IMG/VR virus record: IMGVR_UViG_3300033388_007730
Coordinates: 62,001 to 126,000 of that record
DNA: 64,000 nucleotides
Reading direction: 5' to 3' (one strand)
Shown in pieces: positions 686 to 29,699 of this stretch (position 1 is its first letter; each line of letters begins with the position of its first letter). The position numbers and the translations under genes were made by a program. Under the pieces are notes generated by a model. It did no database searches and was not told where the DNA came from. It saw only the letters and a list, made by a program, of their open reading frames with translations.

Positions 686-900
686 TGGAGTACAAATGTA
701 CGACAGTTCCTATTAATAAACTTATTTCTACGCCATCTGGCTTTGTAATGCCAATGTGTCAAGAATGTAAAACAATTGATTGTGATAATCCAATAGAGTC
801 TAAGAATATTAGTGTACTAGGCGTTAATAAAAATATAAAAGTGTTCGTAAGAGGAACCCAAATTTCTTTTGTTGTTAATTGTAATGGATACACAAAATGA
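685..900 (+). CDS. small Cys-containing hypothetical protein
   Basis: overlaps previous stop (TAATG); CQECKTIDC motif. Confidence 0.55.
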   Translation: MEYKCTTVPINKLISTPSGFVMPMCQECKTIDCDNPIESKNISVLGVNKNIKVFVRGTQISFVVNCNGYTK

Positions 901-1703
901 GTGCAAGAATTAGTAAAGCTAGACAAACAAGTAGAATTGGAAAGCAAAGAGAAAAAAAACAAGATGAATTCTCTAAGCATCAAAAAAGTATGGCTAAAAT
1001 TAAAGCGAGTCCTAATACTCAAAAGATAAGTTATCCCATATATAAGGAGGCTTATGAATATGTGGATAATTTGTTTCCAGGTTCTGAAGTAAAGAAAGTT
1101 GGTATCTATAAAGTGAGTCCTACTTATCTCACTAAATTGGGATATGGTGGTTGCGGTGGTTTTTATTGTAGGTACTCGAAGGTGATTGTAATTTCATCCT
1201 GGTTTCCAGTGGATAAAAGAAGATATCCATCTAGATATAATTTTAGTATCAAAGCTAAAATAACTAAAGATGAAGTGATAGCACATGAATTGCTTCATTA
1301 TTGTTTTGTAGAAGAGGGTGGCAATTCTAATAGTAGAGAAATAAATGAAGAGTTTGCTTATGGTTGGTCAATTGGATATTTAAGATTTAAAGGACATTCA
1401 GACGATTTTATTATAACAAAGAATTTTTATCCATTCTTGGTAGAGATTATGTCTAAACAGGCTTTAGATTATGTTTTACATTTGGATGGTAGTACCAGAG
1501 CTGAATATAATAAATTTTCTAAATTCAAGCAAAGGGAATTTTTTAGAAAATATGGAATAAAATGGCATAATAAAAGAAAAGAATTAGCATATGAATATGG
1601 GGAAGATCTCATTGAGTTATATGATAGAAAAGCATCAGAGGGAACTCACTGCACTAAAGAAGTTACAAAAACTGACCGATTTGATCTAATGGATCTAGAT
1701 TAG
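897..1703 (+). CDS. putative zincin-like metallopeptidase-domain protein with C-terminal tag
   Basis: VIAHELLHY (HExxH) with downstream EEFAY; ends TDRFDLMDLD. Confidence 0.55.
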   Translation: MSARISKARQTSRIGKQREKKQDEFSKHQKSMAKIKASPNTQKISYPIYKEAYEYVDNLFPGSEVKKVGIYKVSPTYLTKLGYGGCGGFYCRYSKVIVISSWFPVDKRRYPSRYNFSIKAKITKDEVIAHELLHYCFVEEGGNSNSREINEEFAYGWSIGYLRFKGHSDDFIITKNFYPFLVEIMSKQALDYVLHLDGSTRAEYNKFSKFKQREFFRKYGIKWHNKRKELAYEYGEDLIELYDRKASEGTHCTKEVTKTDRFDLMDLD

Positions 1704-1727
1704 AAGGTCTTCATATCGGAGACAACT

Positions 1728-2243
1728 ATGAGCTACGAACATAATTTTGATGAAAAAATTGTGGTATTTCCAGATGAAGAAAATTATCTAAAATGTAAAT
1801 TAGCATATTTAGAATATGAAAAGGGATTTGAAGAGAGTGAGACTCATTTTTCTTTTTTGGAATATATACAAGGTTCTTGGCAGAGTAATTTAATGGGTTG
1901 GGTGGTAGAAGAGATTAAAGATAATGATACAGCTTTTCAAACTTACACTTTTTCTGTAGATTGGTCAGATTCAGCAAATGATAGTTGGAGTAGCTCTTCA
2001 TACACAAATACTACTACAGAAAGTTCTCAATCTGTTGTTGGAGATGATGGAACTATTGTTGGATTTAATGGAGAAACTTTATATACTACTTTAGTACTAG
2101 GCTCTACCAACACTACAGATTTACATAATGGATGGATAAGAACAGATTCTACTCATCGTTATTCTACTGATACTCCAGAAGAACAAGAGAAAAAGAGAAA
2201 AAAGAATGAGTTTGATAGGTTTGATATTTTAGATTTTGATTAG
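1728..2243 (+). CDS. hypothetical protein with C-terminal tag
   Basis: SD GGAG; Ser/Thr-rich middle; ends FDRFDILDFD. Confidence 0.65.
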   Translation: MSYEHNFDEKIVVFPDEENYLKCKLAYLEYEKGFEESETHFSFLEYIQGSWQSNLMGWVVEEIKDNDTAFQTYTFSVDWSDSANDSWSSSSYTNTTTESSQSVVGDDGTIVGFNGETLYTTLVLGSTNTTDLHNGWIRTDSTHRYSTDTPEEQEKKRKKNEFDRFDILDFD

Positions 2244-2250
2244 AATTTTA

Positions 2251-2279
2251 TAGAAAAGTGAAAAGCAATATATTATAAT
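2251..2279 (+). promoter_or_regulatory. sigma70-like promoter
   Basis: TAGAAA-17 nt-TATAAT. Confidence 0.55.
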
Positions 2280-2290
2280 GGGGGAATACA

Positions 2291-2578
2291 ATGATTAAAT
2301 TTTTTTGGTATGAACATCCTAAAACAGGAGAAATATTTTCAGATCAAAGAATGGAAGGGTATGAGGAAAAACCGTTAGTCAAAGGGGGAGTTAAGTGTGA
2401 GTTGGTTAGAGATTATGTTCCTCCTGTAGAAGAAAGAGATGATATTAATTTGGCAATTATCAACAAGAATAGAGAAGTTTTTCAGGCTGATGCTGATTGG
2501 GTGAAAAGATGTAAACCGAAATATGTTAAGTTTCAGGATGGTCATAGAGAGCGTTATGACCCAACTAAACATAACTAG
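2291..2578 (+). CDS. hypothetical protein
   Basis: 95-aa ORF directly downstream of the promoter. Confidence 0.6.
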   Translation: MIKFFWYEHPKTGEIFSDQRMEGYEEKPLVKGGVKCELVRDYVPPVEERDDINLAIINKNREVFQADADWVKRCKPKYVKFQDGHRERYDPTKHN

Positions 2579-2599
2579 AACAAAGATGTAGGAGAAAGA

Positions 2600-2809
2600 A
2601 TGGATGAAAAGAAAAAATGTGATTGGAGTGGTCATTCTAATCGCTACACACTAGCTGATAAATTCTTATTCAATAAACTATTACCAACTTTATTGAGTAA
2701 AGTGGCAAGAGATGAACCTTGGGCGAGAAAAGAGCATAAAGAGATGATGAAAAGATTTGAGAACAATTTTGGTGGAGAGCCTCTAGAAATTAGTGAGGAA
2801 AATAAATGA
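2600..2809 (+). CDS. hypothetical protein
   Basis: SD AGGAG; ATGA overlap with next gene. Confidence 0.55.
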   Translation: MDEKKKCDWSGHSNRYTLADKFLFNKLLPTLLSKVARDEPWARKEHKEMMKRFENNFGGEPLEISEENK

Positions 2810-3171
2810 GATATGTTAGAAAAGAACATATTGTAACCACTATATGTAATGAAGATGTGACAGAGGATGATATTATAAGTAGTGTTTTGGCTAGTCTAAA
2901 AAACAATATGATAGAATTTTCTTTAAACACCAAAAAATATTTTCCAAGTTGTTTTGATTATAAATATACTCATTATAATAAAGTTAAAGTTGAAAGTGTG
3001 GGAGAGAATGTCGTTGATTTTATAATTTTTGACAAGTTTTCTACTACTCATTTAAGAGGCATTCATTTCTCTGACATAGTAGAGATTAGTGCCATTACGA
3101 CAGTAGATAAAATTTTAAAAACCAAACCTAATGCTACCAGGTGGGATTTTTTAGATATAAGAGAGGAATAA
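2806..3171 (+). CDS. hypothetical protein with tag variant
   Basis: ends ATRWDFLDIREE. Confidence 0.6.
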   Translation: MRYVRKEHIVTTICNEDVTEDDIISSVLASLKNNMIEFSLNTKKYFPSCFDYKYTHYNKVKVESVGENVVDFIIFDKFSTTHLRGIHFSDIVEISAITTVDKILKTKPNATRWDFLDIREE

Positions 3172-3173
3172 TT

Positions 3174-3374
3174 ATGGCATATTTAATTAGAGCAATAGGC
3201 GAAAAAATTGGCACTACAGAATATGAGAAAATTGATGATGCAAAAAGTTTTGCAACAACTCATATTGAGAATTACAAAGAGGGATTTGAGATAGTGGATA
3301 AAGGGAGTGGAAGAATTGAGTACACGGATAAAAGAGAAGAAGTGAGCAGAACAGATTTAATAGATTGGGATTAA
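3174..3374 (+). CDS. hypothetical protein with tag variant
   Basis: start moved to ATG 3174 (SD GAGG); ends VSRTDLIDWD. Confidence 0.55.
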   Translation: MAYLIRAIGEKIGTTEYEKIDDAKSFATTHIENYKEGFEIVDKGSGRIEYTDKREEVSRTDLIDWD

Positions 3375-3375
3375 T

Positions 3376-3957
3376 ATGACAGAATGTTATTATATAGGAA
3401 GTAGAAAGTGCAGAGTTCGTACAATAACCCCTAAACAATTGGCAGAAGCAACAGAAGCAGGGATTACAAGAAGAGATTATCATCGTAGTGTCGGCTCTAC
3501 AGGACATTATTATGATCCGGAACAAGGAGAATATAAAAATGAAATATATGGATGTTTGGGAGAGATAGTATTTAGAGATATCGTAAAAAAAAATGGTCTT
3601 GGATCTGTTTCTCATTTTTATCCGTTTTATTCAATTGGCAGGGAAGAGATAGCAAAAAAGGCAAATCATGATGCGGAGATATGTTCAAAGACAATAGAAG
3701 TAAAAACAGTTATTCCTCCAAGCGGGCATAAAAAAAGAATATTAGTTAAATTAAGAGAGTATAAAAAAGGAATTAATTTTTATGTTGTTGTTAAATTTAT
3801 TAATGATAATGAATATGTCTTTGCTGGATTTTGTACTGATGAAGAGTTGAAAATAAATACACCACGTAGTTTTGGGCAGGGAGGAAAATGTTATTGGAGA
3901 TTGTTGGAAGATTTGCATCACATGAAAAAAGATTGGTGGGAATTTGAGGAGAAGTAA
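3376..3957 (+). CDS. putative PD-(D/E)XK restriction-endonuclease-fold protein
   Basis: GCLGE...HDAEI...IEVKT pattern. Confidence 0.45.
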   Translation: MTECYYIGSRKCRVRTITPKQLAEATEAGITRRDYHRSVGSTGHYYDPEQGEYKNEIYGCLGEIVFRDIVKKNGLGSVSHFYPFYSIGREEIAKKANHDAEICSKTIEVKTVIPPSGHKKRILVKLREYKKGINFYVVVKFINDNEYVFAGFCTDEELKINTPRSFGQGGKCYWRLLEDLHHMKKDWWEFEEK

Positions 3958-3958
3958 A

Positions 3959-4255
3959 ATGGAAGAACACAGTCCATATTTTAATTATATTACATGGAAA
4001 CAAATGGCAGAGATTTCAACTTCTGTGACAGAGAATGGTGTAGTAGATGACATGTTATTTGCATTAAAGTTGCTCTCTATAATATATTGTATCGAAGAAG
4101 ATATATTAAAGGATATGAAGATGAGTGACATTATGAGATTGAAAAATGCTGTTGAGAAAGGAACACCAGAGGATGTTAAAAGAGAGAAAAAATGGGTGAT
4201 AAGTTATATTAAAGATAAATATGAAGTTGATAGATTTGAGTTGATGGACTTGTAA
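3959..4255 (+). CDS. hypothetical protein with C-terminal tag
   Basis: SD GAGGAG before ATG 3959; ends VDRFELMDL. Confidence 0.6.
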   Translation: MEEHSPYFNYITWKQMAEISTSVTENGVVDDMLFALKLLSIIYCIEEDILKDMKMSDIMRLKNAVEKGTPEDVKREKKWVISYIKDKYEVDRFELMDL

Positions 4256-4317: not shown

Positions 4318-4500
4318 ATGGGTAAGCTAAAAGCTAAAGAGTTTCAGTATGAAGAATTATTTTCGGAAGTTAAAGAGATAAAAGAGAAAAACAAGGAAAA
4401 TGAATCTAAAATTGAAGAATTAGAAAAAAGCAATAAAGAGTTAGAAGAAAGCAATAAGAAGTTGAATAAATATACCAAATTTGAGGCGATGGACATTTGA
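4318..4500 (+). CDS. small coiled-coil protein with C-terminal tag
   Basis: heptad-like ELEKSNKELEESNK; ends YTKFEAMDI. Confidence 0.55.
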   Translation: MGKLKAKEFQYEELFSEVKEIKEKNKENESKIEELEKSNKELEESNKKLNKYTKFEAMDI

Positions 4501-4516
4501 AAAGACTTGAAGCCAC

Positions 4517-4665: not shown

Positions 4666-6066
4666 ATGAAATTCAGTAATAAAGAGTTTGTGCATTGGCA
4701 TGTTCATAGCGAAAATTCGAAATTTGACGGATTGGCGAAATTAGATGAGTTAGTAATGAGAGCAAGAGAGATGGGGTTCCCAGCTCTTGCACTTACTGAC
4801 CATGGAAATATTCAGGGCTGGATTCAGTTCTTGAAATTAGCGAGAGCTACTAAAGATAAAAAAGGTAATGATATTCCTTATGCTCCTATTAAACCTATTC
4901 TTGGTTGCGAGTTTTATCTTTCCCGAAAAATGGATATAGGTCAATATGATGAAAAGATGAAGAAGAAGGGTGAGCCTGTAAGACAACAACCGGATAAGAG
5001 GAAAGGAAATAGACATTTAAATCTTTACGCAATGAACTTTAAGGGATATAAGAATATTTGCAGATTATCTCAAGCTTCATTCACAAGAGGATTTTACTCA
5101 GATCCAAGAATTGATATAACTACTTTAGCGGAGCATAGTGAAGGTGTTATGATAGGTTCTGCTTGCTTATCTAGTCTGATTAATGTTAATCTTATGTATG
5201 GAAGATACAATGAAGCTAAACAAGTTTGCACTACTTTAAAAGATATATTTGGAGAGAATTTTTTCCTAGAAATAATGTATCATGGAATTCCTGAAGAAAG
5301 AGAAATATTACCTTACATATTTCAACTATCAAAAGAATTAGAGATACCAGTAGTCGCTACTAATGATTCTCATTATATACATAAGGAACAAGGAAGATCA
5401 CAAGAGTTATTAATGTGCATGTCTCAGCAGAGGTGTATAAAAGATTCTAAAAGATTAAACTTTAGACATATGGAATTTTATTTGAAAAGTGCTGATGAGA
5501 TGTACAAATTATTTAAGGGTCATCCAGAAGCTCTTGTAAATTCAAGAGTATTGGCAGAGAGAATTAATACAAAAGATATTGAAGAGAATTTGTTTGGAGG
5601 TATGAGACTTCCTATTTTTGATATCCCATCAGAGCATAAAGATCCATTTGAGTATATGGAAAAATTAGCCTGGGAAGGAATGAAAAAGATTGGATGGGAT
5701 AAGAGTCAACCACACATAGACGCATTGAAAATGGAGATAAATGATGTGTTAGTGGCAAGAGATAATAATAATTATGATTTTGCTACATATTTCTTAATAG
5801 TAAAAGATTATATTGAGAATGCAAGAGATAATGGTGTGTTAGTAGGTTGCGGAAGAGGAAGTGGATATGCCAGTGTGTTGTTAAGGTGTCTTGGAATTAC
5901 TTATGGAGCTGATCCTTTAGAGTATGGACTTTTATGGGAAAGATTTTTAGGGTTCTCAGATTCTAGGTTCATTAAAGAAAATGATTTTGGCTTTGAAACG
6001 GATATAATTCAACAAACATTAGATATGGATGTTGGTGGTGATGTAGAGGAAGATTTTAATGGATGA
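4666..6066 (+). CDS. dnaE: DNA polymerase III alpha, piece 1 (PHP domain plus start of palm)
   Basis: HWHVHSENSKFDG, ALALTDHGN, GCEFY, VVATNDSHY, GCGRGSG, LGITYGADPLEYGLLWERFL. Confidence 0.9.
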   Translation: MKFSNKEFVHWHVHSENSKFDGLAKLDELVMRAREMGFPALALTDHGNIQGWIQFLKLARATKDKKGNDIPYAPIKPILGCEFYLSRKMDIGQYDEKMKKKGEPVRQQPDKRKGNRHLNLYAMNFKGYKNICRLSQASFTRGFYSDPRIDITTLAEHSEGVMIGSACLSSLINVNLMYGRYNEAKQVCTTLKDIFGENFFLEIMYHGIPEEREILPYIFQLSKELEIPVVATNDSHYIHKEQGRSQELLMCMSQQRCIKDSKRLNFRHMEFYLKSADEMYKLFKGHPEALVNSRVLAERINTKDIEENLFGGMRLPIFDIPSEHKDPFEYMEKLAWEGMKKIGWDKSQPHIDALKMEINDVLVARDNNNYDFATYFLIVKDYIENARDNGVLVGCGRGSGYASVLLRCLGITYGADPLEYGLLWERFLGFSDSRFIKENDFGFETDIIQQTLDMDVGGDVEEDFNG

Positions 6067-6244
6067 ACAGAAAGAATTACTATGTAGATTTTGGGAAAAG
6101 AAATTGGGTCTAGAGTATATGTAATATCTTAGAGATCGAAAAAATGATTACCTTATGAGTATTTTAGAAGAAGATTAGAATAAATTTGATATTATAGACA
6201 TAGATAAAGAAGAAGAAAAAGAAGATGATATATGTTCCACTTAG
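6059..6244 (+). pseudogene. small tagged ORF interrupted by two in-frame stops
   Basis: SD GAGGA, ATG 6059; TAA 6122 and TAG 6176 in frame; readthrough gives ...NKFDIIDIDKEEE. Confidence 0.4.
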
Positions 6245-6404
6245 TGATGAAGAAAAAGGACAATTAAAACAGTACTGGCTGACAATGCGTCCAAAAGAAT
6301 ATGTTGATGTTCTATTTGATGATCTTCCTGTCCCTCATTATTGTTGTGATTATATGGTAAATATTACAGAGACACAAAAAAGATTTGAGTTAATGGATAT
6401 ATGA
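6225..6404 (+). CDS. 59-aa hypothetical protein with C-terminal tag (absent from ORF track)
   Basis: hand translation MIYVPLSDEEKG...TETQKRFELMDI*. Confidence 0.65.
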   Translation: MIYVPLSDEEKGQLKQYWLTMRPKEYVDVLFDDLPVPHYCCDYMVNITETQKRFELMDI

Positions 6405-6422
6405 GTATAAGAATAAAGAAAC

Positions 6423-6662
6423 TTGATGATAGAGGTAATTTATTTTAAATATGATAATGGATACGAGGTCTGGAGAGATTTTGATGAGGAAAATAATTGT
6501 ATTCATTGGAAAGATTTTAGTGGAGTAGAACATTGGTGGGAGCATAGAGTAGAAACTTCAGTGATGTGTATAAAAATTACAAAAGAAGAATTTGAGGAAA
6601 TAGAAGCAAAGAAAAAAGGAAAGAAAAATATTTATACAAGATTTGAGATAATGGATATGTGA
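6423..6662 (+). CDS. short aromatic-repeat protein with C-terminal tag; true start probably 6401 with a frameshift near 6440
   Basis: repeat units YFKYDNGYEVWRDF / IHWKDFSGVEHWWEH; ends YTRFEIMDM; upstream frame MSIRIKKLDDRGNL fits the repeat. Confidence 0.55.
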   Translation: MMIEVIYFKYDNGYEVWRDFDEENNCIHWKDFSGVEHWWEHRVETSVMCIKITKEEFEEIEAKKKGKKNIYTRFEIMDM

Positions 6663-6673
6663 AAGAAGATTAA

Positions 6674-7723
6674 ATGCCTGATTTAGAAATAATTAGAAAA
6701 GAAATTATAGAGGAAATAAGCAATAGATTGAAAGGTGATCCTAGATTGCCAAAAGCTGTTTCTAAAGCAAATGAAGAGTTAGATGTTATGAGCAATACTA
6801 ACGGATTAGAACAGAAAAACAATTTAGAAACATTTTATTCTATATGGAAGAAGAATCAAGGGAAAGTTGGACATAAAAATGAGATAAACAGTTGGACAGC
6901 TTTCTTTTTAGGAATGACAGAAACTAAACCTGAAAAAGGTAGTGAGTTCGTTCCCATAAGAAGGTGTTTCGCAAGAGCTGGGTTCCCAGACATAGATACA
7001 GATTTTGATGATGAGAAGAGAGATAGTGTTTATGACTACATCATTGCAAAATATGGAAGAGAAAATGTTGGTAATATTGGTACTCATGGAAAGCTGAAAT
7101 TTAAGAGCTGTGTGACAAGAGTTGTTAAGGCATTAGATGTGGCAGGATCTTTCCTTAAAAGTCCAGAGGCTTATATTTCTGATAATGCTCAAAAGGTTAC
7201 AGAGATATTAGAGCCATTTCCTAAAAAGGGATTAATGAAAGTTACTGATGAAGATGGCAATGAGCATTTGATAAAGAATTTTAAAGATGCTTATAGATAT
7301 TGTCCTGATTTTGCTAAGTCTATAGACAAACATCCAGAGATAAAAATACACGCCGAACATATAGAAGGAACATTTGCAAATTTTGGTTGTTTAGCAGCTA
7401 ATACTCCGATTTTAACTGAAAAAGGTTGGATAAGAATAGATCAATTAACTACTAAATATAAAATAGCTTATGTTGATAAAGATGAAAAAATTAAATATAC
7501 TGATGAGTTCAAGAAGTTTAAAACAGGTATAAAAAAGACATACCGAATGAGATTATCTAGCGGTTCATTCATTGATGTGACAGATGAACATTTAATTTTT
7601 ACAGATAAGGGATGTGTTAAGTTTGAAGAAATTAGAAAAAATCAAAAAAAATATAAAATATATGAAGTTAAAGAATATATCAAAGAACGACGAGCCAAGC
7701 TTTGTGATATATTAGATAATTAA
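6674..7723 (+). CDS. dnaE: DNA polymerase III alpha, piece 2, fused to N-terminal half of a split intein
   Basis: FPDIDTDFDD catalytic motif, YIIAKYGRENV, IEGTFANFG then intein block A CLAANTPILT. Confidence 0.88.
   Translation: MPDLEIIRKEIIEEISNRLKGDPRLPKAVSKANEELDVMSNTNGLEQKNNLETFYSIWKKNQGKVGHKNEINSWTAFFLGMTETKPEKGSEFVPIRRCFARAGFPDIDTDFDDEKRDSVYDYIIAKYGRENVGNIGTHGKLKFKSCVTRVVKALDVAGSFLKSPEAYISDNAQKVTEILEPFPKKGLMKVTDEDGNEHLIKNFKDAYRYCPDFAKSIDKHPEIKIHAEHIEGTFANFGCLAANTPILTEKGWIRIDQLTTKYKIAYVDKDEKIKYTDEFKKFKTGIKKTYRMRLSSGSFIDVTDEHLIFTDKGCVKFEEIRKNQKKYKIYEVKEYIKERRAKLCDILDN
7388..7723 (+). mobile_element. split intein N-fragment (IntN, 111 aa)
   Basis: starts Cys CLAANTPILTEKG; block B IDVTDEHLIFT; stop follows with no endonuclease. 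Confidence 0.85.
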
Positions 7724-7751
7724 TTACCTAATCATAAGGTTATGGAGGGAA

Positions 7752-7895
7752 ATGATGAATAATTGTGAGTTATTTGAAATAGTATCAATAGAAGAATTAG
7801 ATTTTGAAGATGTTTATGATATCTCTATGAATGAGGGTCCAGAATTTTTTCAAAATGAGCATAATTATGTGGCTAGCAATATAGTTGTTCATAAT
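7752..7895 (+). mobile_element. split intein C-fragment (IntC, about 48 aa)
   Basis: block F VYDISM...HNYVASNI and block G VVHN followed by +1 Cys. Confidence 0.85.
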
Positions 7896-9152
7896 TGTCA
7901 CGCTGCTGGAGTTGTGGTATCGGATGTCCCACTTGATGAGATTGCTCCGTTGAGAACAGCAAGGAAAGGTATGTTAGCAACTCAGTTCCCTAATGAAGAT
8001 TTAGAGACTTTGGGTTTGATAAAATTTGATATATTAGCTATCGCTACTTTGTCTGTTATAAAAAATACTGTGGAAATGATTAGAAAGAATTATGATATAA
8101 CAATAGATATAGAGAATTTACCGTTAGATGATCAAATGACTTTTGAGATGTATAGAACCGGAAATCTTGGAGGTGTCTTCCAATGTGAGAATTGGGGTAT
8201 GCAAAGGACAATGAGAGATATTAAGGTTGACAGTTTTGGAGATATAGTTGCTGGTTTAGCATTATACAGACCTGGACCTATGGATTCTATCCCTAAATAT
8301 TGTGCTAGAAAAAATGGAGAAGAGGACGTTAGTTATTTTCATCCTTCAATTGAACCTCACGTTAAGAAGTATCTTGAAAAAACTTATGGAATTTTATGTT
8401 ATCAAGAACAGGTTATGCAGATTTGTAATTCATTAGCTGGATTTACTATTACTGATGGTTATATTATGATTAAAGCTATTGGTAAGAAAAAAGATTATTT
8501 GATGAATAAATTTAAAGAACAATTCATAGGTGGATGTGTTAAGAATGGTGTAGATGAGTATGTCGCTATAGAATACTGGACTAAATTTATAACTCCATTT
8601 GCAAGTTATGGGTTTAATTTGGCGCACAGTGCTTGTTACGGTTATAATTCTTATACTACTGCTTATTTAAAAGCACATTATCCTGAAGAGTTTATGTGTT
8701 CATTCTTAAATGTTATAACTCATGGATCTGGAGATAAATATGATAAGATAGAAGCATTTGAGAGAGAATTTAAGAGGAAAATGAATGTTAAGTTTCTTCC
8801 AAGAGATATTAATCGGTCGAAGGTGGAGTATATCGTTGAAAAGCCTGGAGATAGATGCGGAGTAACAAAGATAGAGATGAGACCTAGTTTAATATGCAAA
8901 GGAGTTGGATTTAAAGCTGCTGAGGACATAGAGCAAAATCAACCATTCAAAGATTTGGAAGAGTTTGTTGAGAAGATAAATACTTCTACTGTAGATACTA
9001 GAGTTATTGAAGCATTGGCAATAGGCGGATATTGGGGCAAGAAATATGTCAAGGATCCACTTAGTTTAGTCAAAAAGTTCACTATGATACGCGATGATAG
9101 AAAAAAATCTTTTCAAAAAGGATATGAACCAGGAGCAGATATTTTTGGATAA
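7752..9152 (+). CDS. dnaE: split intein C-fragment fused to DNA polymerase III alpha piece 3
   Basis: own SD GGAGG at 7744; ...NIVVHN|CHAAGVVVSD, KFDIL, GVFQCE, ALYRPGPMD, FASYGFNLAHSACY, YLKAHYP; no OB-fold or tau-binding tail. Confidence 0.9.
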   Translation: MMNNCELFEIVSIEELDFEDVYDISMNEGPEFFQNEHNYVASNIVVHNCHAAGVVVSDVPLDEIAPLRTARKGMLATQFPNEDLETLGLIKFDILAIATLSVIKNTVEMIRKNYDITIDIENLPLDDQMTFEMYRTGNLGGVFQCENWGMQRTMRDIKVDSFGDIVAGLALYRPGPMDSIPKYCARKNGEEDVSYFHPSIEPHVKKYLEKTYGILCYQEQVMQICNSLAGFTITDGYIMIKAIGKKKDYLMNKFKEQFIGGCVKNGVDEYVAIEYWTKFITPFASYGFNLAHSACYGYNSYTTAYLKAHYPEEFMCSFLNVITHGSGDKYDKIEAFEREFKRKMNVKFLPRDINRSKVEYIVEKPGDRCGVTKIEMRPSLICKGVGFKAAEDIEQNQPFKDLEEFVEKINTSTVDTRVIEALAIGGYWGKKYVKDPLSLVKKFTMIRDDRKKSFQKGYEPGADIFG

Positions 9153-9212: not shown

Positions 9213-9386
9213 GTGATTGATGTAAGATGCCCCCAGTGTAATAGCAATGATTTGGAGATCATTGATACCCAAGGTCATATCAAAGATGCCTATATTTCAG
9301 AGAAAACTGGATGTTTGAAATGTGGTCATGTATTTGATGTAGAAGCAAAAATATTTTATAAAAAAATAGGAGAAAAAAATGGCTAA
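9213..9386 (+). CDS. 57-aa zinc-ribbon protein (absent from ORF track)
   Basis: GTG start after SD GGAG; CPQCNSNDLEIIDT...CLKCGHVF. Confidence 0.6.
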   Translation: MIDVRCPQCNSNDLEIIDTQGHIKDAYISEKTGCLKCGHVFDVEAKIFYKKIGEKNG

Positions 9387-9663
9387 ATCTATTGTGAAAA
9401 AGACTATTAGAAGAAAAATCCAAACTGCAAAATTCGAGGCTCTTGATATTGAATTAGAAGTGGAAGAGCAGATTATATGGGATACAGAAGAAGAAAGAAT
9501 AGCGGCTACTGCTAAACTTTCTAAGAGATTGTTGGATGATTTTACTAAGACCTACAATGAAGTAGTCGAGAGAACTGGTGTTGATAGATGTATTGGTGTT
9601 GTTACTGTTAAGAAAGACAACAATAAATCTAATGGATCTGAAGTTGATTTTGATTTTAGTTAA
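9379..9663 (+). CDS. hypothetical protein
   Basis: SD AGGAG; acidic-aromatic end EVDFDFS. Confidence 0.65.
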   Translation: MAKSIVKKTIRRKIQTAKFEALDIELEVEEQIIWDTEEERIAATAKLSKRLLDDFTKTYNEVVERTGVDRCIGVVTVKKDNNKSNGSEVDFDFS

Positions 9664-9674: not shown

Positions 9675-10733
9675 ATGACAGATAGAAGTGATGCTTTAGT
9701 AGCTTTTGAAGAAATGTTCAATGGCGTGTCTGAGGGTAGAGGTAAAGACAACACTGATCAGGCAGAAGAGTATGGTGATAGTTCTTTATCGGAAGAATCA
9801 TTTAACGATGTAGCAAAAAAAGTTGTTAATGATTTAAATGAGTGTGAGAGTGGGCATTCTTTGACAGATGTGAATAAGGTTCTTGGAGATATGGAGGAAG
9901 AAGAAATTCTTAAAGAAGCTCCTAGAGTAGAAATTGTAGAAGTTGTAAAAGATGATTCTGATGATGATTTTGATGCTTTGCCAGAGGAACCTAAAGATCT
10001 TCCAGAGCCTAGTGCAAGATTTGAGGAGATTGTAGAAAAGGCTACAAAAGAATTGGCTGAAGTAACAGAAGTTGTAGAGCATAAGGGTGGTTGTGTCGTT
10101 ATTTCGAATGAAAAAATTAAATGGAATTTAGATAGTCCGACAGCTCTATATAATAATTTTTACAGGAAGAAAAAAGAGTTGGTAGAAATTTATACTGGTA
10201 AACAACTTGATTTTTATGCTCTTAATATAGAACTTCGCAATGCATCAGTAGATATATCTTATGTTGTTTTTGATCAGGAAGTAGTTCTTCAACAGATGCA
10301 GGAAATTCAACAGCATAGAGAAAGAATAAAGAACATATCTTTAGAATGTAATATTCAGTATTTTGTGTGGAAAAGATGGATAGAAAAAGATATGATGAAG
10401 GGTTATCTTGCTATGGTAGAATATATTAAACCAGCTATTAAACAAGAAGGACTCGTTTTAGAACATATGAGAGATTTAGAATATTATTATGCACAGTTAG
10501 AAGCTCTTCATAATAATTGTCAAAAAGTAGAGAAGACTTTAGAAGCAGCATATGATACTTTGAGTAGAAGAGTTTCTATTTGTATGGAACTAAAAACTGG
10601 TATCAGGTATGCCAGGAGCGATAGTAGAGAAACTCCTTCAAAACAAGAGATTGTGAGAGAAGATGATTTTGATGATGTTCCAATGGGAGAAACTGCTACA
10701 AAAAAGAAAAGTGGTTTTATTGGATGGGCTTAA
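9675..10733 (+). CDS. hypothetical protein, acidic N-terminus plus helical/coiled-coil domain
   Basis: 352-aa ORF in the replication module immediately before SSB. Confidence 0.6.
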   Translation: MTDRSDALVAFEEMFNGVSEGRGKDNTDQAEEYGDSSLSEESFNDVAKKVVNDLNECESGHSLTDVNKVLGDMEEEEILKEAPRVEIVEVVKDDSDDDFDALPEEPKDLPEPSARFEEIVEKATKELAEVTEVVEHKGGCVVISNEKIKWNLDSPTALYNNFYRKKKELVEIYTGKQLDFYALNIELRNASVDISYVVFDQEVVLQQMQEIQQHRERIKNISLECNIQYFVWKRWIEKDMMKGYLAMVEYIKPAIKQEGLVLEHMRDLEYYYAQLEALHNNCQKVEKTLEAAYDTLSRRVSICMELKTGIRYARSDSRETPSKQEIVREDDFDDVPMGETATKKKSGFIGWA

Positions 10734-16948: not shown

Positions 16949-16983
16949 CATTTCTGTTAATAAGTTAGATGAGGTGGGAATTT

Positions 16984-20660: not shown

Positions 20661-20936
20661 ATGAATAGAGCAGAAGTAGAAACTAAGGTGGTAGAAGTGG
20701 TTGCACTTCAATTCGGAATGAAAATAAAAGATATAGAACCAGAGACAAACTTTTTAACAGATTTGAATGCAGATAGTTTAGATGCTGTAGAAGTTATTAT
20801 GTGTATTGAGGATAGATTTGATTTGGTCATTCCTGATGAGGAGTCTGAAAAAATGGTAACTGTAAAAATGGTTACTGATTATGTAGAAAAAGAACTTAAA
20901 AAAAGAGAGAATGATGCCGACGAGAGTAGTAAATAG
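20661..20936 (+). CDS. acpP: acyl carrier protein
   Basis: DLNADSLDAVEVIM phosphopantetheine site; FDLVIPDEESEK. Confidence 0.9.
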   Translation: MNRAEVETKVVEVVALQFGMKIKDIEPETNFLTDLNADSLDAVEVIMCIEDRFDLVIPDEESEKMVTVKMVTDYVEKELKKRENDADESSK

Positions 20937-22749: not shown

Positions 22750-23020
22750 GACTAGTGTAATAAATATTAGATCTGATAAGTGTAGAGAAAATTTTGTTTA
22801 CATTGGAAGAGGAAGTAAATGGGGGAATCCTTTCTTTATTGGTAAGGATGGAACTAGGGAAGAAGTAATAGAGAAGTACAGAGACTGGATAAAAACTCAA
22901 CCAGAACTTCTCAATTCTCTACATGAGTTAAAAAATAAGAGGTTGGGATGCTATTGTTATCCCATGCACTGCCACGGTGATGTGTTGATAGAGCTATTAG
23001 AGGAAGAAGATAATGGCTAG
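22727..23020 (+). CDS. DUF4326 family protein
   Basis: VYIGRGSKWGNPF...LGCYCYPMHCHGDVL. Confidence 0.85.
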   Translation: MIVEVDIKTSVINIRSDKCRENFVYIGRGSKWGNPFFIGKDGTREEVIEKYRDWIKTQPELLNSLHELKNKRLGCYCYPMHCHGDVLIELLEEEDNG

Positions 23021-23420
23021 TTTATATGATTATATCCCAAAATACCCTATGTCAATATCTTTTGGAGGGAAAGAGATAAATGTTAGTGGCATTCAAAAAT
23101 TTGAAATAGAAGTGGATAGATGTTTTGCTCACTACTTCGTTTGGGTTGATACTGTTCAAATAGCTCCTCTATTACCATCTGGGAAGAAAAGCACTGTAGT
23201 TTTAACTCCAACCGAGTTAAGTTATGGTAGTCTTTTTAATATATCCAATATAACTTTAGTATGTAAAATTCTGAGTTTAGCATATCAGTCTAGGAGACAT
23301 AGATATATAGTTGAATTAAAATGCATCTTAAATCCAAAATTTTTAACCAAGTTTAAATACATAGAACCAGGAAAAGAAAAAAAAGAAGAAATAGATAAAT
23401 TTGATTTGATGGACTTATGA
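23013..23420 (+). CDS. hypothetical protein with C-terminal tag
   Basis: ends KEKKEEIDKFDLMDL. Confidence 0.6.
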   Translation: MASLYDYIPKYPMSISFGGKEINVSGIQKFEIEVDRCFAHYFVWVDTVQIAPLLPSGKKSTVVLTPTELSYGSLFNISNITLVCKILSLAYQSRRHRYIVELKCILNPKFLTKFKYIEPGKEKKEEIDKFDLMDL

Positions 23421-23635
23421 GTAGAAGAGATTACAGTGAGTATGTTTCAAGAATGAGTTATGGAGATCTTGTTCTACATATAGAAGAAATAGGAAAAGAA
23501 AAATTCAGAGGTCCTTTATCGGATAATTATTTATTGATGTCAGCTCTATGTTGTGAGAAGTACAAAAGAGATCAAGTAGAAAAAGAATTTTTGAGTAGAA
23601 AAAAGATATCAAGATTTAAGTTGATGGAATTATGA
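23417..23635 (+). CDS. hypothetical protein with C-terminal tag
   Basis: ends KKISRFKLMEL. Confidence 0.55.
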   Translation: MSRRDYSEYVSRMSYGDLVLHIEEIGKEKFRGPLSDNYLLMSALCCEKYKRDQVEKEFLSRKKISRFKLMEL

Positions 23636-27294: not shown

Positions 27295-27434
27295 AATTTT
27301 CCCTTTCTATATCTATACTCGCATAAAAATGGGATAGGGACCAAAAAAATTTAAAAATAAAAAAGAGGATATTTAAGATAGATATAGAAATAAGTTAATT
27401 AGTAAGTTATTTATTTATTTGGAGAAATTAAAAA

Positions 27435-27773: not shown

Positions 27774-27878
27774 TGATTGATATTAAAAAATCATCACAGT
27801 ATCGAAAAGATGCTTTTGTAAAAGAATATCAGCTCTGTTCTCATTATAATTCAAAACATATGGTTAGAGCAAAATAAT

Positions 27879-28652
27879 ATGATAGATAATAAAAAAATAT
27901 TATGTGTTATTACGGCAAGGGGTGGTTCTAAGGGAATTCCAATGAAAAATGTCAGACATTTAATGAATGAACCTTTGTTTATGTGGTCTGTATATGCTTC
28001 TCTTCAATCTCAGTATATTGATAAAACAGTAATCTCATCTAACTGTCCAGAAGTAGAAAAGATTTATGCAAATCGGATGTGCAAGGACTGTGGGTGGGAT
28101 TCTGTTAATATTTCCAATCTTACATTTATAAAAAGACCTGAAGATATATCGGGTGATTTGTCAAAAAATGAAGAAGCACTGATACACGCTTATAATTGGA
28201 TGAAGGAAATAGATGAAGAATATGATGTAATAATAAATCTTCAACCCACTTCTCCTTGTAGAATTGGTGATCTCTTAGATAGATGTATTGAGGAATGTCA
28301 TAGAGGGGGGTATGATAGTTTGCTCACAGCAAAAAAAGATACCCCCTTTATATGGCAAAAAAAAGATGGAAAATGGGAATATACAGTAGATAAAAATGAT
28401 TGTTGTAATAGGAAAATGAGGCAGGAATTCGACGAGTCTGAGATGTTATTACATGATTGTGGCAATATTTATATTACTAATACAGATATTTTGCTTGACA
28501 GAGACTGTAGAATAGGTTATAATCCATGTGTATTTGAAGTTGATGGAATAAACTCTATTCAAATAGATAAAGAATTTGATTTTCAGATTATTGAGAAGTT
28601 GGCAGAATCAATGGGATTAGAAACTTTAGTAGATTATTGGACAGAGTTATGA
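27879..28652 (+). CDS. neuA: acylneuraminate (nonulosonate) cytidylyltransferase
   Basis: ITARGGSKGIPMKN, LQPTSPCR, GNIY, IDKEFDF. Confidence 0.88.
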   Translation: MIDNKKILCVITARGGSKGIPMKNVRHLMNEPLFMWSVYASLQSQYIDKTVISSNCPEVEKIYANRMCKDCGWDSVNISNLTFIKRPEDISGDLSKNEEALIHAYNWMKEIDEEYDVIINLQPTSPCRIGDLLDRCIEECHRGGYDSLLTAKKDTPFIWQKKDGKWEYTVDKNDCCNRKMRQEFDESEMLLHDCGNIYITNTDILLDRDCRIGYNPCVFEVDGINSIQIDKEFDFQIIEKLAESMGLETLVDYWTEL

Positions 28653-28665
28653 AAGGAATTTTGTA

Positions 28666-28914
28666 ATGAGTGAAGAAAGTGTATCAAGAGTAATGATTTT
28701 GGCTGTTTATATTAGGAATCTCTCTAGGAATCTCTGCAATAGTTCAAAATGGATAGAGGATAGGATAGATGCTTTGATAAGCGAACAAACAGGGACTTCT
28801 AAGACAGATGATGTTAAACTTGGTGTCAAAGTGGCTTTTGAAGCTGCTAAAAAAGATTTATGTAATATAGAAGCGGTGTTAAAAGAGTTAAAGATAATAG
28901 ACCAAGAGGAATAG
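28666..28914 (+). CDS. hypothetical protein
   Basis: SD AAGGA; 82 aa. Confidence 0.5.
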   Translation: MSEESVSRVMILAVYIRNLSRNLCNSSKWIEDRIDALISEQTGTSKTDDVKLGVKVAFEAAKKDLCNIEAVLKELKIIDQEE

Positions 28915-28926
28915 GAAGATGATCCT

Positions 28927-29472
28927 ATGGTTAAAAAGAGAAAATTAGTTTTTTATGGTGATGGACAAAAGAAGAAGAAAAAAGATAAACCTGTTGTAGT
29001 GGTAGGAACAGGTGGAAGCGAAAATATTTGGTATAGTTTAAAATTGCAGCAAGAAATATCTTTTCTCATAATGAATAATGATTTAAGATGTTCTATCATG
29101 CAGTTTGAGTATGTGATTGATTGGAGAACTCTTTGTTCTCAGGGAAGATTTTCTGAAGAATTATTAGATGTATTTTCAGATAAGGTTCATTGGGACATTG
29201 TTTCTTCTCGTAAAAAATTATCAGAAAAGATCATGAATAAACATGCTGATAAATTGAATTGGATGGCTGTCAGTCGTAATCAGAATTTGGGGAAAGAATT
29301 TATTTTTGAACATTTTAATGAGTTAGATATAGATACATTAATTAAGAGAAAACTTATAACGGTTGATGATTTAGATAAAAGAGAAGTAGAATTAAAGGAA
29401 AAGAAGATAGCAGAAAAAAGAGATGAAGAAGATATCGTCAACCGTTTCAATATCATGGAGATGGATGAATGA
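28927..29472 (+). CDS. tryptophan-repeat protein with C-terminal tag
   Basis: repeats IDW..L / VHW..VS / LNW..VS followed by SE-type motifs; ends VNRFNIMEMDE. Confidence 0.6.
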   Translation: MVKKRKLVFYGDGQKKKKKDKPVVVVGTGGSENIWYSLKLQQEISFLIMNNDLRCSIMQFEYVIDWRTLCSQGRFSEELLDVFSDKVHWDIVSSRKKLSEKIMNKHADKLNWMAVSRNQNLGKEFIFEHFNELDIDTLIKRKLITVDDLDKREVELKEKKIAEKRDEEDIVNRFNIMEMDE

Positions 29473-29699
29473 AGTGTGTAGATTGCAAAATGACTTTAAT
29501 GGGTAGCATGCCAGGTTCTTTTTACGCAAATGGAAGATGTTGTAAATGTAATAAAATATATGAAACAAAAATAGCTTTGAAGGAAGAAGCAGACAAACTG
29601 ATAGAAGAAGCAGATAAACTGATAGAAGAAATTAATAAAAAAGAGACAGCAGAAAAAGAAGAAAAAATGGGATGTTTTGATATGATAGATTTTGATTAG
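29469..29699 (+). CDS. small Zn-finger protein with tag variant
   Basis: CVDC...CCKC; EEADKLI twice; ends GCFDMIDFD. Confidence 0.55.
   Translation: MKCVDCKMTLMGSMPGSFYANGRCCKCNKIYETKIALKEEADKLIEEADKLIEEINKKETAEKEEKMGCFDMIDFD

What the first reader, a model, noticed from the sequence alone, without database searches (positions are those of the whole stretch)
897..29699. Shared C-terminal peptide tag on about 13 unrelated proteins: candidate undescribed sorting or docking system
Seen in sequence: unrelated ORFs end in the same short motif, usually after a Lys/Glu-rich linker. The cases (by stop position) are 1703 DRFDLMDLD, 2243 DRFDILDFD, 3171 TRWDFLDIREE, 3374 SRTDLIDWD, 4255 DRFELMDL, 4500 TKFEAMDI, 6404 KRFELMDI, 6662 TRFEIMDM, 23420 DKFDLMDL, 23635 SRFKLMEL, 29472 NRFNIMEMDE and 29699 GCFDMIDFD, plus NKFDIIDID in the broken ORF 6059-6244. 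Consensus is [R/K]-F-[D/E]-[L/I]-[M/L/I]-D-[L/I/F/M]. The codons vary synonymously (Arg CGA/AGG/AGA/CGT, Phe TTT/TTC, Leu CTA/TTG/TTA, all three stop codons), so selection acts on the peptide and not on a DNA repeat. Carriers include an HExxH protein, a coiled coil, a Trp-repeat protein and a Zn finger. No recognisable replication or glycan enzyme carries it. Inference: a short linear motif that addresses a cargo class to one receptor, for example capsid packaging/ejection, compartment import, an AAA+ protease or unfoldase, or a host hub protein. I do not know of a described system with this motif.
Basis: partly seen in the sequence, partly recalled or inferred. Interest (0 to 1): 0.92.

Follow-up and report, generated by a model that had tools for sequence, protein, structure and literature searches.

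The report
Shared docking tail on huge-phage proteins
Dozens of otherwise unrelated small proteins in a clade of uncultivated huge phages end in the same eight-residue helix; it most likely plugs them into one phage machine, probably a Cdc48-like AAA ATPase that carries a short version of the same ending, and I found no published description of it.

Summary
All 12 tails and the broken copy are at the stated coordinates. The motif is [S/N/D/T]-R-F-[D/E]-[I/L]-[L/M]-D-[L/I/F], at or within a few, mostly acidic, residues of the C-terminus. It is strongly C-terminal, found only on the coding strand, and selected as a peptide. It is kept in orthologs at 35-60% identity (119 of 119 in one family). 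Across about 90 related loci it ends 16% of ORFs, against 0.5% on the antisense strand, on at least 76 sequence-unrelated protein bodies. One 10-kb array has 21 tailed genes. It is confined to one clade of 100-550 kb phages from sediments and marine water.

The receptor is not shown. The best candidate is a conserved phage Cdc48/p97-like double-tier AAA ATPase, encoded 4.7-6.3 kb upstream of the window. It ends in a short version of the same tail (...K-D-L-D-I/L), and that ending tracks the cargo tails clade by clade. The AAA's ending is older than the cargo set: a mycobacteriophage homolog ends ...RVLDL.

A T4-type or beta-clamp-binding motif is the main rival. No clamp gene was seen, and the polymerase carries a different tail. 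The motif fails the membership tests for clamp motifs, HbYX and MIM.

The parts
897..1703 (+). Carrier 1: 268-aa putative HExxH metalloprotease, core family; tail core RFDLMDL at 1677-1697, then D
   Evidence: Invariant HELxH...EEFAYGW. The family is present in 65 loci, and 119 of 119 database members carry the tail. No Pfam, PHROG, NCBIfam or PDB match.
1728..2243 (+). Carrier 2: 171-aa Trp-rich protein, core family; tail RFDILDF at 2217-2237, then D
   Evidence: Family found in 28 loci. Orthologs in L004, L018, L019 and L022 keep the tail.
2806..3171 (+). Carrier 3: 121-aa protein, core family; tail RWDFLDI at 3139-3159, then REE
   Evidence: Family found in 34 loci. Orthologs end RFDILDL, WDLIDV+GEDMDA and RLDYLDI+ESE.
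3141..3374 (+). Carrier 4: 77-aa protein; tail RTDLIDW at 3348-3368, then D
   Evidence: The L004 ortholog ends SRVDLIDMD.
3944..4255 (+). Carrier 5: 103-aa protein; tail RFELMDL at 4232-4252, then stop
4318..4500 (+). Carrier 6: 60-aa coiled-coil-like protein; tail KFEAMDI at 4477-4497, then stop
   Evidence: The L030 ortholog ends KFEAMDL.
6059..6244 (+). Pseudogenised carrier with motif KFDIIDI at 6182-6202 followed by 14 more residues (DKEEEKEDDICST), interrupted by in-frame stops
   Evidence: L030 has an intact 68-aa ORF at the same place.
6225..6404 (+). Carrier 7: 59-aa protein in the gap between polymerase pieces 1 and 2; tail RFELMDI at 6381-6401
   Evidence: The gap holds 1-8 tailed mini-genes in relatives.
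6423..6662 (+). Carrier 8: 79-aa Trp-rich protein in the polymerase gap; tail RFEIMDM at 6639-6659
   Evidence: It belongs to a 20-member accessory family.
23013..23420 (+). Carrier 9: 135-aa protein; tail KFDLMDL at 23397-23417
23417..23635 (+). Carrier 10: 72-aa protein; tail RFKLMEL at 23612-23632
28927..29472 (+). Carrier 11: 181-aa protein (phrog_3532, unknown function); tail RFNIMEM at 29443-29463, then DE
   Evidence: L002 has three tailed paralogs of this body.
29469..29699 (+). Carrier 12: 76-aa protein with two CxxC pairs and a coiled-coil-like stretch; tail CFDMIDF at 29673-29693, then D
4666..9152 (+). Context: split DnaE-type DNA polymerase (4666-6066, 6674-7723, 7752-9152). The gap after piece 1 is a hotspot for tailed genes. 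The polymerase's own conserved C-terminus is different: ...[A/V/I]-D-[I/L/M]-F-[G/A].

Best explanation
The tail is a clade-specific short linear motif: a capped, amphipathic C-terminal mini-helix, [S/N/D/T]-R-F-[D/E]-[I/L]-[L/M]-D-[L/I/F], followed by the free carboxylate or a few, mostly acidic, residues. It works as a common docking handle.

Shown:
- It is selected as a peptide.
- It is restricted to C-termini.
- It is portable between unrelated protein bodies.
- It is carried by three universally conserved proteins, one a putative HExxH metalloprotease, plus a large and fast-changing set of small early or replication-region proteins.

Inferred:
- All carriers are read by one pocket.
- That pocket belongs to, or is shared with, the phage's own Cdc48/p97-like double-tier AAA ATPase (552 aa; L016:2792-4450, 4.7-6.3 kb upstream of the window).
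- That ATPase has an active D2 tier and a degenerate D1-like tier in place of the usual N-domain. It ends in a minimal version of the tail (...[K/R]-x-[L/I]-D-[L/I]) on a variable linker.

Proposed mechanism: the ATPase ring has a site that binds its own C-terminal L-D-L peptide, in cis or between subunits. The cargo tails are stronger versions of that peptide. They tether the HExxH protease and many small adaptor or substrate proteins to the ring. One remodelling or unfolding machine is thereby aimed at many targets during early infection.
For: That it is a selected motif.

Ortholog conservation with diverging linkers.

Scale and portability:
- 347 of 2,166 sense ORFs carry the tail against 24 of 4,993 antisense ORFs, on 76 bodies with no BLAST links.
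- 21 tailed genes lie within 9.85 kb in L126.

Confined to the clade:
- The probe finds true hits only on clade contigs.
- It finds none at ORF ends in cellular genomes.
- The HExxH family is absent from 185,579 species genomes.

Identity of the AAA:
- Pfam AAA plus AAA_lid_3.
- Best solved relatives are Cdc48/p97 at 2e-63.
- AF2 model at pLDDT 87.
- Foldseek aligns the full length onto the p97/Cdc48/AFG2/VAT D1-D2 cassettes.
- Intact Walker A, Walker B and Arg fingers; the D1-like tier has no P-loop.

The AAA's own tail:
- Conserved in about 100 family members, sometimes duplicated in tandem.
- Missing from the most distant family members (27-30% identity), one of which lies on a bacterial contig.
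- Present in a Cluster O mycobacteriophage homolog at 31% identity (...RVLDL), so it predates the cargo set.

Conserved synteny of the AAA with the tail cluster down to 44-48% AAA identity.

AAA tail and cargo tails agree genome by genome:
- Terminal L versus I: odds ratio 19, p = 1e-11 at cargo level; odds ratio 20, p = 0.007 at genome level.
- Examples: L032, L064, L079, L078, L094.

Divergent lineages have short cargo tails (F-L-D-L/I) equal to the AAA-type ending.

Rhizobium phage L338C, which has a full-length AAA homolog, has exactly one perfect cargo-type tail (gp056...DRYEILDM+6). There are none at ORF ends in 302 kb of control DNA.
Against: - No binding evidence of any kind; co-folding could not be run.
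- After phylogenetic control, the AAA-cargo covariation rests on only about 4 independent changes and the paired test is not significant (p = 0.5-1). Every clade-specific gene co-occurs with the tails equally well.
- The AAA carrying a tail fits equally well with the AAA being one more client of a third-party hub.
- Its pore loop 1 is aliphatic (G-S-L-V-G), which is weaker than in strong threading motors.
- The AF2 monomer does not dock its own tail (pLDDT about 50 for the last 20 residues).
- The Dylan cargo-like example is ambiguous.
- Only about 85 kb of the 219-kb genome and pieces of its relatives were seen, so a clamp, a peptidase ring or another hub could be encoded elsewhere.
Confidence: 0.4

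Rival explanations
1. The tail is a sliding-clamp-binding motif, or binds another replisome hub. It would tether many accessory proteins to a phage or host clamp on DNA, as the T4 gp43, gp33 and gp55 tails bind gp45 and as bacterial QL[S/D]LF motifs bind the beta clamp.
For: - Same architecture as the T4 motif: a hydrophobic-acidic peptide at the C-terminus on a variable linker, sometimes followed by acidic residues. T4 gp43 ends ...SLDFLFG and gp55 ends ...SLDFLYEAND.
- R-F-D-L-M aligns with Q-L-D-L-F.
- The tailed genes sit in and around the replication module.
- The polymerase's conserved ...D-I-F-G ending suggests that a beta-type clamp is used.
- The outgroup phage Dylan encodes a beta clamp in the same operon as its AAA.
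Against: - No clamp or clamp-loader gene in the roughly 85 kb examined here, nor in the Pfam-annotated flanks of six relatives.
- The 352-aa candidate next to the polymerase is helical and not a clamp.
- The polymerase carries a different tail, whereas in T4 the polymerase shares its motif with gp33 and gp55.
- The most conserved tail positions (the final D-hydrophobic pair and the C-terminal position) are not part of clamp-binding consensus motifs.
- The AAA's K-D-L-D-L ending does not fit QL[S/D]LF.
- Drift of the tail by clade is unexpected for the highly conserved host beta-clamp pocket.
Confidence: 0.2
2. The tail is a C-terminal degron. Early proteins are tagged for timed removal, either by the phage AAA acting as an unfoldase together with a protease, or by a host AAA+ protease. 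The carriers would be substrates and not adaptors.
For: - Terminal position, with a free carboxylate in about 73% of HExxH-family tails.
- The carriers are mostly small early-type proteins in dense arrays.
- A Cdc48-like ATPase and an HExxH protein are conserved alongside.
Against: - The ATPase and the putative protease carry the tag themselves.
- About a quarter of tails are followed by 1 to 6 or more extra residues, which is unlike degrons that depend on the carboxylate.
- The three core carriers are conserved, sizeable proteins that are unlikely to exist only to be destroyed.
- The pore loop is aliphatic.
Confidence: 0.15
3. The tail mimics a host short linear motif and docks phage proteins onto a host hub such as RNA polymerase, the ribosome, a chaperone or a protease.
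For: - The AAA-type L-D-L ending is shared by phages of very different hosts, which a universal host partner could explain.
- The carriers look like host-takeover genes.
Against: - A codon-restricted probe found no cellular ORF ending in the canonical tail. This is a limited test.
- Drift of the tail by clade, in step with a phage protein's own tail.
- The host is unknown, so the idea cannot be tested directly.
Confidence: 0.1
4. The tail is a virion-packaging, ejection or compartment-import signal.
For: Many unrelated cargoes share one address tag, which is the formal logic of such systems.
Against: - The tailed genes lie in replication and early-type regions, not next to structural genes.
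- A replication-module ATPase carries the ending.
- No capsid, portal or shell gene was seen nearby.
- Known phage targeting signals differ: the T4 capsid-targeting sequence is N-terminal (my own knowledge).
Confidence: 0.05
5. The conservation is a by-product of a DNA or RNA element at gene 3' ends, such as a translational-coupling site, a terminator or a recombination site.
For: Glu codons in tails prefer GAG and Leu codons prefer TTR. Genes are tightly packed and often overlap.
Against: - Third codon positions are near random, and Arg uses all six codons in body-like proportions.
- All three stop codons are used.
- The upstream DNA is unrelated.
- There is no signal on the antisense strand.
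Confidence: 0.02

Closest known systems
T4-family sliding-clamp-binding motif (SCBM) on gp43, gp33 and gp55
   Same: A hydrophobic and acidic peptide at or near the C-terminus, on a variable flexible linker. It is shared by functionally different phage proteins, can be swapped between them, and tolerates a few trailing acidic residues.
   Different: The T4 core is S-L-D-F-L-F/Y and is read by gp45. Here the core is R-F-[D/E]-I-L-D-L. No clamp gene was found, the polymerase does not share the motif, and the number of carriers is tens per genome instead of three or four.
Bacterial beta-clamp-binding motif QL[S/D]LF
   Same: A penta- or hexapeptide with a hydrophobic-acidic-hydrophobic-hydrophobic pattern, often C-terminal, on many client proteins.
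   Different: There is no Gln. The invariant final Asp-hydrophobic pair and the preference for the very C-terminus are not part of that motif. The phage polymerase's own ...D-I-F-G ending fits QL[S/D]LF better than the tails do.
HbYX motif of proteasomal ATPases, archaeal Cdc48 and non-ATPase activators
   Same: A three-residue C-terminal ending on a Cdc48-type AAA ATPase and on unrelated other proteins, all docking into the same pockets of one ring. Archaeal CDC48 ends L-Y-L; here the ATPase ends L-D-L.
   Different: The penultimate residue is Asp and not Tyr or Phe. No 20S, HslV or ClpP-like gene was seen. The carriers are mostly small monomer-sized proteins, not ring activators.
MIM elements of ESCRT-III tails read by MIT domains of Vps4 and other AAA ATPases
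   Same: Many related and unrelated proteins end in a short C-terminal helix that recruits a classic-clade AAA ATPase, which then remodels them. The spacing I-x-x-R-F-x-x-L seen in many tails resembles the MIM1 pattern; that comparison rests on my own recollection of MIM1.
   Different: The phage ATPase has no MIT three-helix bundle; its N-terminal 260 residues are a degenerate AAA tier. There are no ESCRT-III-like carriers.
SSB C-terminal tip and the acidic C-tails of T7 gp2.5 and gp4 (my own knowledge)
   Same: Acidic, hydrophobic-tipped C-terminal tails that organise replisome contacts. Such tails also occur here on the SSB, the DnaB-like helicase and a 94-aa protein.
   Different: In those systems one hub protein carries the tail and many partners read it. 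Here many proteins carry the tail. The sequences also differ: D-D-D-I-P-F-type aromatic tips against R-F-D-I-L-D-L.

Membership tests
T4-type sliding-clamp-binding motif | Motif shared by the replicative polymerase and the other clamp clients | tested here: not met
   The polymerase's last piece ends ...GADIFG...TIDIFG...EHDIFA or ...SADIFG in all relatives, not the tail.
T4-type sliding-clamp-binding motif | [quoted passage not shown] | tested here: inconclusive
   None found in about 85 kb of this genome or in the Pfam-annotated flanks of relatives. The 352-aa candidate is not a clamp. About 135 kb of the 219-kb contig was not examined.
T4-type sliding-clamp-binding motif | Core sequence S-L-D-F-L-[F/Y] | tested here: not met
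   The T4 tails were read from the record. Only the hydrophobic-Asp-hydrophobic-hydrophobic pattern is shared.
Bacterial beta-clamp-binding motif | Consensus Q-L-[S/D]-L-F (or QLxLxL) | tested here: not met
   Position 1 is Arg in 90% of tails, never enriched for Gln. Position 5 is L or M, and an extra invariant D-hydrophobic pair follows (consensus).
Bacterial beta-clamp-binding motif | Physical binding to the clamp's hydrophobic cleft | not testable with these tools
   Co-folding of a peptide with a clamp is not available here, and the host is unknown.
HbYX docking motif | Hydrophobic residue, then Tyr or Phe at the penultimate position, then any residue at the C-terminus | tested here: not met
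   The penultimate residue is Asp in 94% of tails and in the AAA's own tail. Definition taken.
HbYX docking motif | A 20S-type peptidase ring as receptor | tested here: inconclusive
   No peptidase ring was found in the regions examined. The whole genome was not seen.
MIM-MIT (Vps4-type) recruitment | A MIT three-helix-bundle domain on the ATPase or a cofactor | tested here: not met
   The AF2 model and Foldseek show residues 1-260 as an alpha/beta AAA-like tier plus lid, aligned to the p97 D1 tier.
Cdc48/p97-type AAA ATPase (the candidate reader) | Classic-clade AAA module with Walker A, Walker B, second region of homology and Arg fingers | tested here: met
   Pfam PF00004 plus AAA_lid_3. PDB best hits are Cdc48/p97 at 2e-63. 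Motifs GxPGCGKS, ILWIDEIEK, ATAN and RAGRFD are conserved.
Cdc48/p97-type AAA ATPase (the candidate reader) | Two stacked AAA tiers (D1 and D2) | tested here: met
   Foldseek aligns 540-600 columns to the D1-D2 cassettes of p97, Cdc48, AFG2 and VAT, with E about 1e-21 and TM 0.55-0.58. The D1-like tier lacks a P-loop.
Cdc48/p97-type AAA ATPase (the candidate reader) | Double-psi barrel N-domain that binds cofactors | tested here: not met
   The protein starts directly with the D1-like tier.
Cdc48/p97-type AAA ATPase (the candidate reader) | Aromatic pore loop 1 for substrate threading | tested here: not met
   The pore loop is G-S-L-V-G, conserved across the family.

The most novel reading that the evidence does not exclude
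The tails define a phage-encoded, modular protein-targeting platform. Dozens of fast-evolving small adaptor proteins each grip a different host or phage target. All share one C-terminal handle that recruits a Cdc48-like remodelling ATPase, and with it a separately encoded HExxH protease that carries the same handle. This would be a split, FtsH-like or p97-cofactor-like system in a bacterial virus, with the ATPase's own L-D-L ending acting as a built-in competitor or assembly latch.
Probability: 0.25. Interest if true: 0.9.

Novelty: new variant of a known kind. Interest (0 to 1): 0.8.

Why it matters
**A functional handle on orphan genes.** Huge phages carry hundreds of orphan genes with no clue to their function. 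A shared eight-residue ending on up to two thirds of the genes in some arrays sorts a large part of that unknown gene content into one functional class. It also gives an experimental handle, because one peptide should pull down the common partner.

**If the partner is the Cdc48-like ATPase.** This would be, to my knowledge, the first virus-encoded adaptor-plus-unfoldase system in prokaryotic viruses. It would also give a function to phrog_8638, an uncharacterised ATPase family that is also present in cultured Cluster O mycobacteriophages and in Rhizobium phages.

**If the partner is a clamp.** This would be by far the largest clamp-client set known in a virus.

**In either case.** The motif is a ready-made orthogonal docking tag, and a marker for annotating this phage clade in metagenomes.

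Tried and rejected
- **The 352-aa gene after the polymerase as a divergent sliding clamp.** There is no Pfam, PHROG or PDB match. AF2 shows a helical domain and disordered regions, and Foldseek finds nothing significant beyond a weak likeness to T4 UvsY. Rejected.
- **A MIT domain or a Cdc48 N-domain on the AAA.** Rejected by the model and Foldseek.
- **Other conserved orphan genes as the hub.** The 196-aa, roughly 300-aa and roughly 270-aa families were searched as profiles against solved structures. Nothing turned up, apart from a weak DnaC-like signal for the roughly 270-aa protein. It is not homologous to the gene after the AAA in phage Dylan.
- **Placing the HExxH carrier in a peptidase family.** No hits with Pfam, PHROGs, NCBIfam, a PDB profile, or a profile search of 5.8 billion proteins, which returned 236 hits, all from the same orphan family.
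- **Internal KFEALDI at 9430.** It lies in a conserved folded region of a 94-aa protein and is not a tail.
- **Covariation as proof of a shared pocket.** The raw association is strong but not significant after tree-based control.
- **Divergent AAA lineages (P0110, P0113, P0120).** The contigs end before the cargo region, so they are uninformative.
- **Host-motif mimicry.** A probe of 185,579 species genomes gave 10 hits, all chance.
- **Dylan gp114 as a cargo example.** Downgraded, because an AAA-less Arthrobacter phage homolog has a similar helix.
- **More distant polymerase relatives (L005-L014).** They have no tails.
- **Megablast of the window against deposited phages.** No match.

Full report
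**What the window is.** The 64-kb window is positions ~62,001-126,000 of a 219-kb IMG/VR contig. It has 31% GC, strong GC skew and almost every gene on the + strand. It has no tRNAs and no close relative among deposited phages.

The first 30 kb is a replication and early-gene region. It contains:
- a DnaE-type polymerase split into three ORFs;
- a likely SSB;
- a UvsX/RecA homolog;
- a Toprim primase piece;
- a Cas4-like exonuclease;
- SpoVS;
- a UvrD helicase with an intein;
- a LAGLIDADG/HNH endonuclease.

From about 36 kb to 62 kb there is a large glycan-biosynthesis island.

- A loose pattern hits 14 times in sense frames, 12 of them within three residues of a stop codon. It hits once on the antisense strand and never in 30-64 kb.
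- A leave-one-out PSSM scores 9 of 636 C-terminal positions against 3 of 18,283 internal ones. Residue-shuffled proteins give 0.16 genes on average.
- The DNA behind the tails agrees at codon positions 1 and 2 (76%) but barely above chance at position 3 (42% against 33%). The DNA upstream is unrelated.
- Over 277 tails from related genomes, codon choice for Arg, Phe, Asp and Ile matches the gene bodies. Glu leans to GAG and Leu to TTR. I attribute that to overlapping ribosome-binding sites of the tightly packed next genes and to single-step changes among I/L/M/F codons. This is an inference.
- The copy in 6059-6244 is a pseudogene of a carrier that is intact in a 90%-related genome.

**How far does it extend?** Relatives found through the polymerase, the HExxH carrier and the AAA protein carry the tail everywhere.
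- Orthologs at 35-60% identity keep it while the linker in front changes.
- All 119 full-length database members of the HExxH family have it.
- Across about 90 loci, 347 of 2,166 sense ORFs end in it, against 24 of 4,993 antisense ORFs.
- With tails removed, the carriers fall into 76 clusters with no BLAST links: three core families and many accessory ones.
- A DNA probe for the canonical form finds true ORF-terminal hits only on contigs of this clade. It also uncovered new clusters elsewhere in those genomes, including 21 tailed genes among about 32 in 9.85 kb of a 548-kb phage, falling into 16 unrelated clusters.
- The same probe finds no ORF-terminal hit in 185,579 species genomes, and the HExxH family is absent from them.

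**The motif, refined.** From 283 carriers the motif is S/N/D/T (91%), R (90%), F (74%), D/E (86%), I/L/F, L/M, D (94%), L/I/F. It is followed by the C-terminus, or less often by a few, mostly acidic, residues. The S/N/D/T position reads as a helix N-cap, so I interpret the unit as a capped amphipathic mini-helix; this is an inference. In the most divergent lineages the tail shortens to F-L-D-L/I. The linker in front is only slightly more charged than comparable regions of other proteins.

**What reads it?** I first tested the idea that it is a clamp-binding tail.
- The literature and the T4 record show that gp43 and gp55 end in S-L-D-F-L-F/Y on variable linkers, and that these tails can be swapped. 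The bacterial motif is QL[S/D]LF. The architecture is the same, and R-F-D-L-M can be aligned with Q-L-D-L-F.
- However, no clamp or clamp loader appears in the regions I could read. The 352-aa gene beside the polymerase is not a clamp. The polymerase has its own, different, conserved ending ...D-I-F-G. The best-conserved tail positions lie outside the clamp-motif pattern.

**The AAA ATPase.** Upstream of the window, in the same conserved gene block, every genome encodes a 552-aa ATPase (L016:2792-4450). The block runs SF2 helicase, a roughly 300-aa orphan, IF3, the AAA, a roughly 270-aa DnaC-like orphan, DnaB, then DnaG.
- Its C-terminal half is a classic AAA module closest to Cdc48/p97.
- The AF2 model is confident (pLDDT 87).
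- Foldseek aligns the whole chain onto the D1-D2 cassettes of p97, Cdc48, AFG2 and VAT.
- The first tier has lost its P-loop, while the second keeps all catalytic motifs. Its pore loop is aliphatic.
- Its own C-terminus, on a variable linker, is [K/R]-x-[L/I]-D-[L/I] in about 100 family members, sometimes in two tandem copies. The most distant family members lack it, and one of those lies on a bacterial contig.
- Genome by genome, this ending matches the cargo tails: I with I, L with L, F with F, and a trailing acidic or other residue with the same in the cargo.
- The raw association is strong (odds ratio about 20). On a tree of 29 genomes, however, it reduces to about four independent changes, and the paired test has no power. 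I therefore treat it as suggestive only.

**Cultured outgroups.** The ATPase family is phrog_8638. Full-length homologs at about 30% identity occur in Cluster O mycobacteriophages and in Rhizobium phage vB_RleS_L338C.
- Dylan gp95 ends ...RVLDL, so the ATPase's ending predates the cargo expansion.
- Dylan has no convincing cargo set. Its one candidate is ambiguous.
- The Rhizobium phage ATPase ends ...MSLDS. One protein there, gp056, which overlaps the start of the replicative helicase gene, ends ...DRYEILDM plus six residues.
- With a strict pattern, that is the only terminal hit in the 75 kb of that genome examined. There were none in 302 kb of control DNA.

**Conclusion.**
- Shown: a selected, portable, clade-wide C-terminal peptide handle on a very large and varied set of proteins.
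- Inferred, at about 40%: the handle is read by a pocket on the Cdc48-like ATPase complex, which also binds the ATPase's own short ending. This would tether a putative HExxH protease and many small adaptors or substrates to one remodelling machine.
- Rivals: a clamp or other replisome hub (about 20%), a degron (about 15%), a host hub (about 10%), packaging or import (about 5%), and a DNA-level artefact (about 2%).
- The motif fails the defining tests for T4 SCBM, QL[S/D]LF, HbYX and MIM-MIT.
- Four literature searches found no description of it.

**Limits.**
- Genes were called from ORFs only.
- About 135 kb of this genome was not seen.
- The host is unknown.
- No peptide-protein co-folding could be run.

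Noticed in passing
window 4666-6066, 6674-7723, 7752-9152: The DnaE-type polymerase is split into three ORFs here and into two in relatives (a PHP piece, then the rest). The split after the PHP piece is conserved across the clade, and the gap is a hotspot holding 1-8 tailed mini-genes. In the 90%-related L030 pieces 2 and 3 are one 656-aa ORF, so the window's extra split with about 160 extra residues is recent.
   Followed up: partly
window 16969-19962; relatives L024, L028, P0038, P0093, P0112: There is an intein in the UvrD helicase. Inteins also sit in the AAA, the DnaB-like helicase and the SF2 helicase of relatives. Many database entries of the AAA family are 334-345-aa N-fragments ending in a Cys-Leu-x-x-Asp-Thr-Lys-Ile-like intein start, which suggests split or interrupted genes.
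   Followed up: no
L016:2240-2752 (just upstream of the window) and the same position in all relatives: A phage-encoded translation initiation factor IF3 homolog sits directly upstream of the AAA ATPase in every genome examined.
   Followed up: no
window 9675-10733: A 352-aa orphan lies between the polymerase and the SSB. It has a long disordered N-terminal half with short helices and acidic Phe motifs, and a confident helical domain with a weak fold likeness to the T4 recombination mediator UvsY. It lies next to the SSB and UvsX genes.
   Followed up: partly
window 9379-9663, 10820-11497, 7752-9152; L016:5125-6810; L016:6-1304: A second class of conserved C-terminal tails, acidic with an aromatic tip, occurs on replisome proteins: the SSB (...DEDFNPDW), a 94-aa protein (...EVDFDFS), the DnaB-like helicase (...DEEDDWDF), the polymerase (...ADIFG) and the SF2 helicase (...EDEFII..). 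This suggests a replisome wired by several tail codes.
   Followed up: partly
window 36512-62000: A large glycan-biosynthesis island: at least ten glycosyltransferases, a NeuB-type sialic-acid synthase fused to a cupin (39132-40598), two cytidylyltransferases, methyltransferases and MptE-like proteins. None carries a tail.
   Followed up: partly
window 14524-14847, 20661-20936, 30794-31192, 33954-34595, 19964-20491: Auxiliary genes: a SpoVS homolog, an acyl carrier protein, a cREC_REC receiver domain, a peptide deformylase and a CYTH domain protein.
   Followed up: no
window 2291-2578 and 685-900: Two small orphan families conserved next to the core carriers have their own invariant endings: ...GH[R/K]ERYDP[T/S]KH[C/N] and ...C[E/N]G[Y/F]. 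Their meaning is unknown.
   Followed up: no
P0172 / L018 (548-kb contig): The 548-kb relative is labelled at NCBI as a 'Candidatus Asgardarchaeia archaeon' MAG, and another relative as Paceibacterota. Several relatives come from marine-sediment samples. The gene content (IF3, DnaE, DnaB, DnaG) is of bacterial type, so these labels are probably binning artefacts. The host is unknown.
   Followed up: no
L129 (Mycobacterium phage Dylan) and L131 (Rhizobium phage vB_RleS_L338C): The uncharacterised 'AAA-ATPase' of Cluster O mycobacteriophages (phrog_8638) is a Cdc48-like double-tier ATPase ending ...RVLDL, in the same operon as a phage beta clamp, Ku and ParB. The Rhizobium phage homolog sits near the replicative helicase, and gp056 next to that helicase carries a cargo-type tail.
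   Followed up: partly
window 6674-7723: Polymerase piece 2 ends ...AKLCDILDN, which resembles the tail but ends in Asn. The ending is not conserved in relatives and is probably coincidental.
   Followed up: partly
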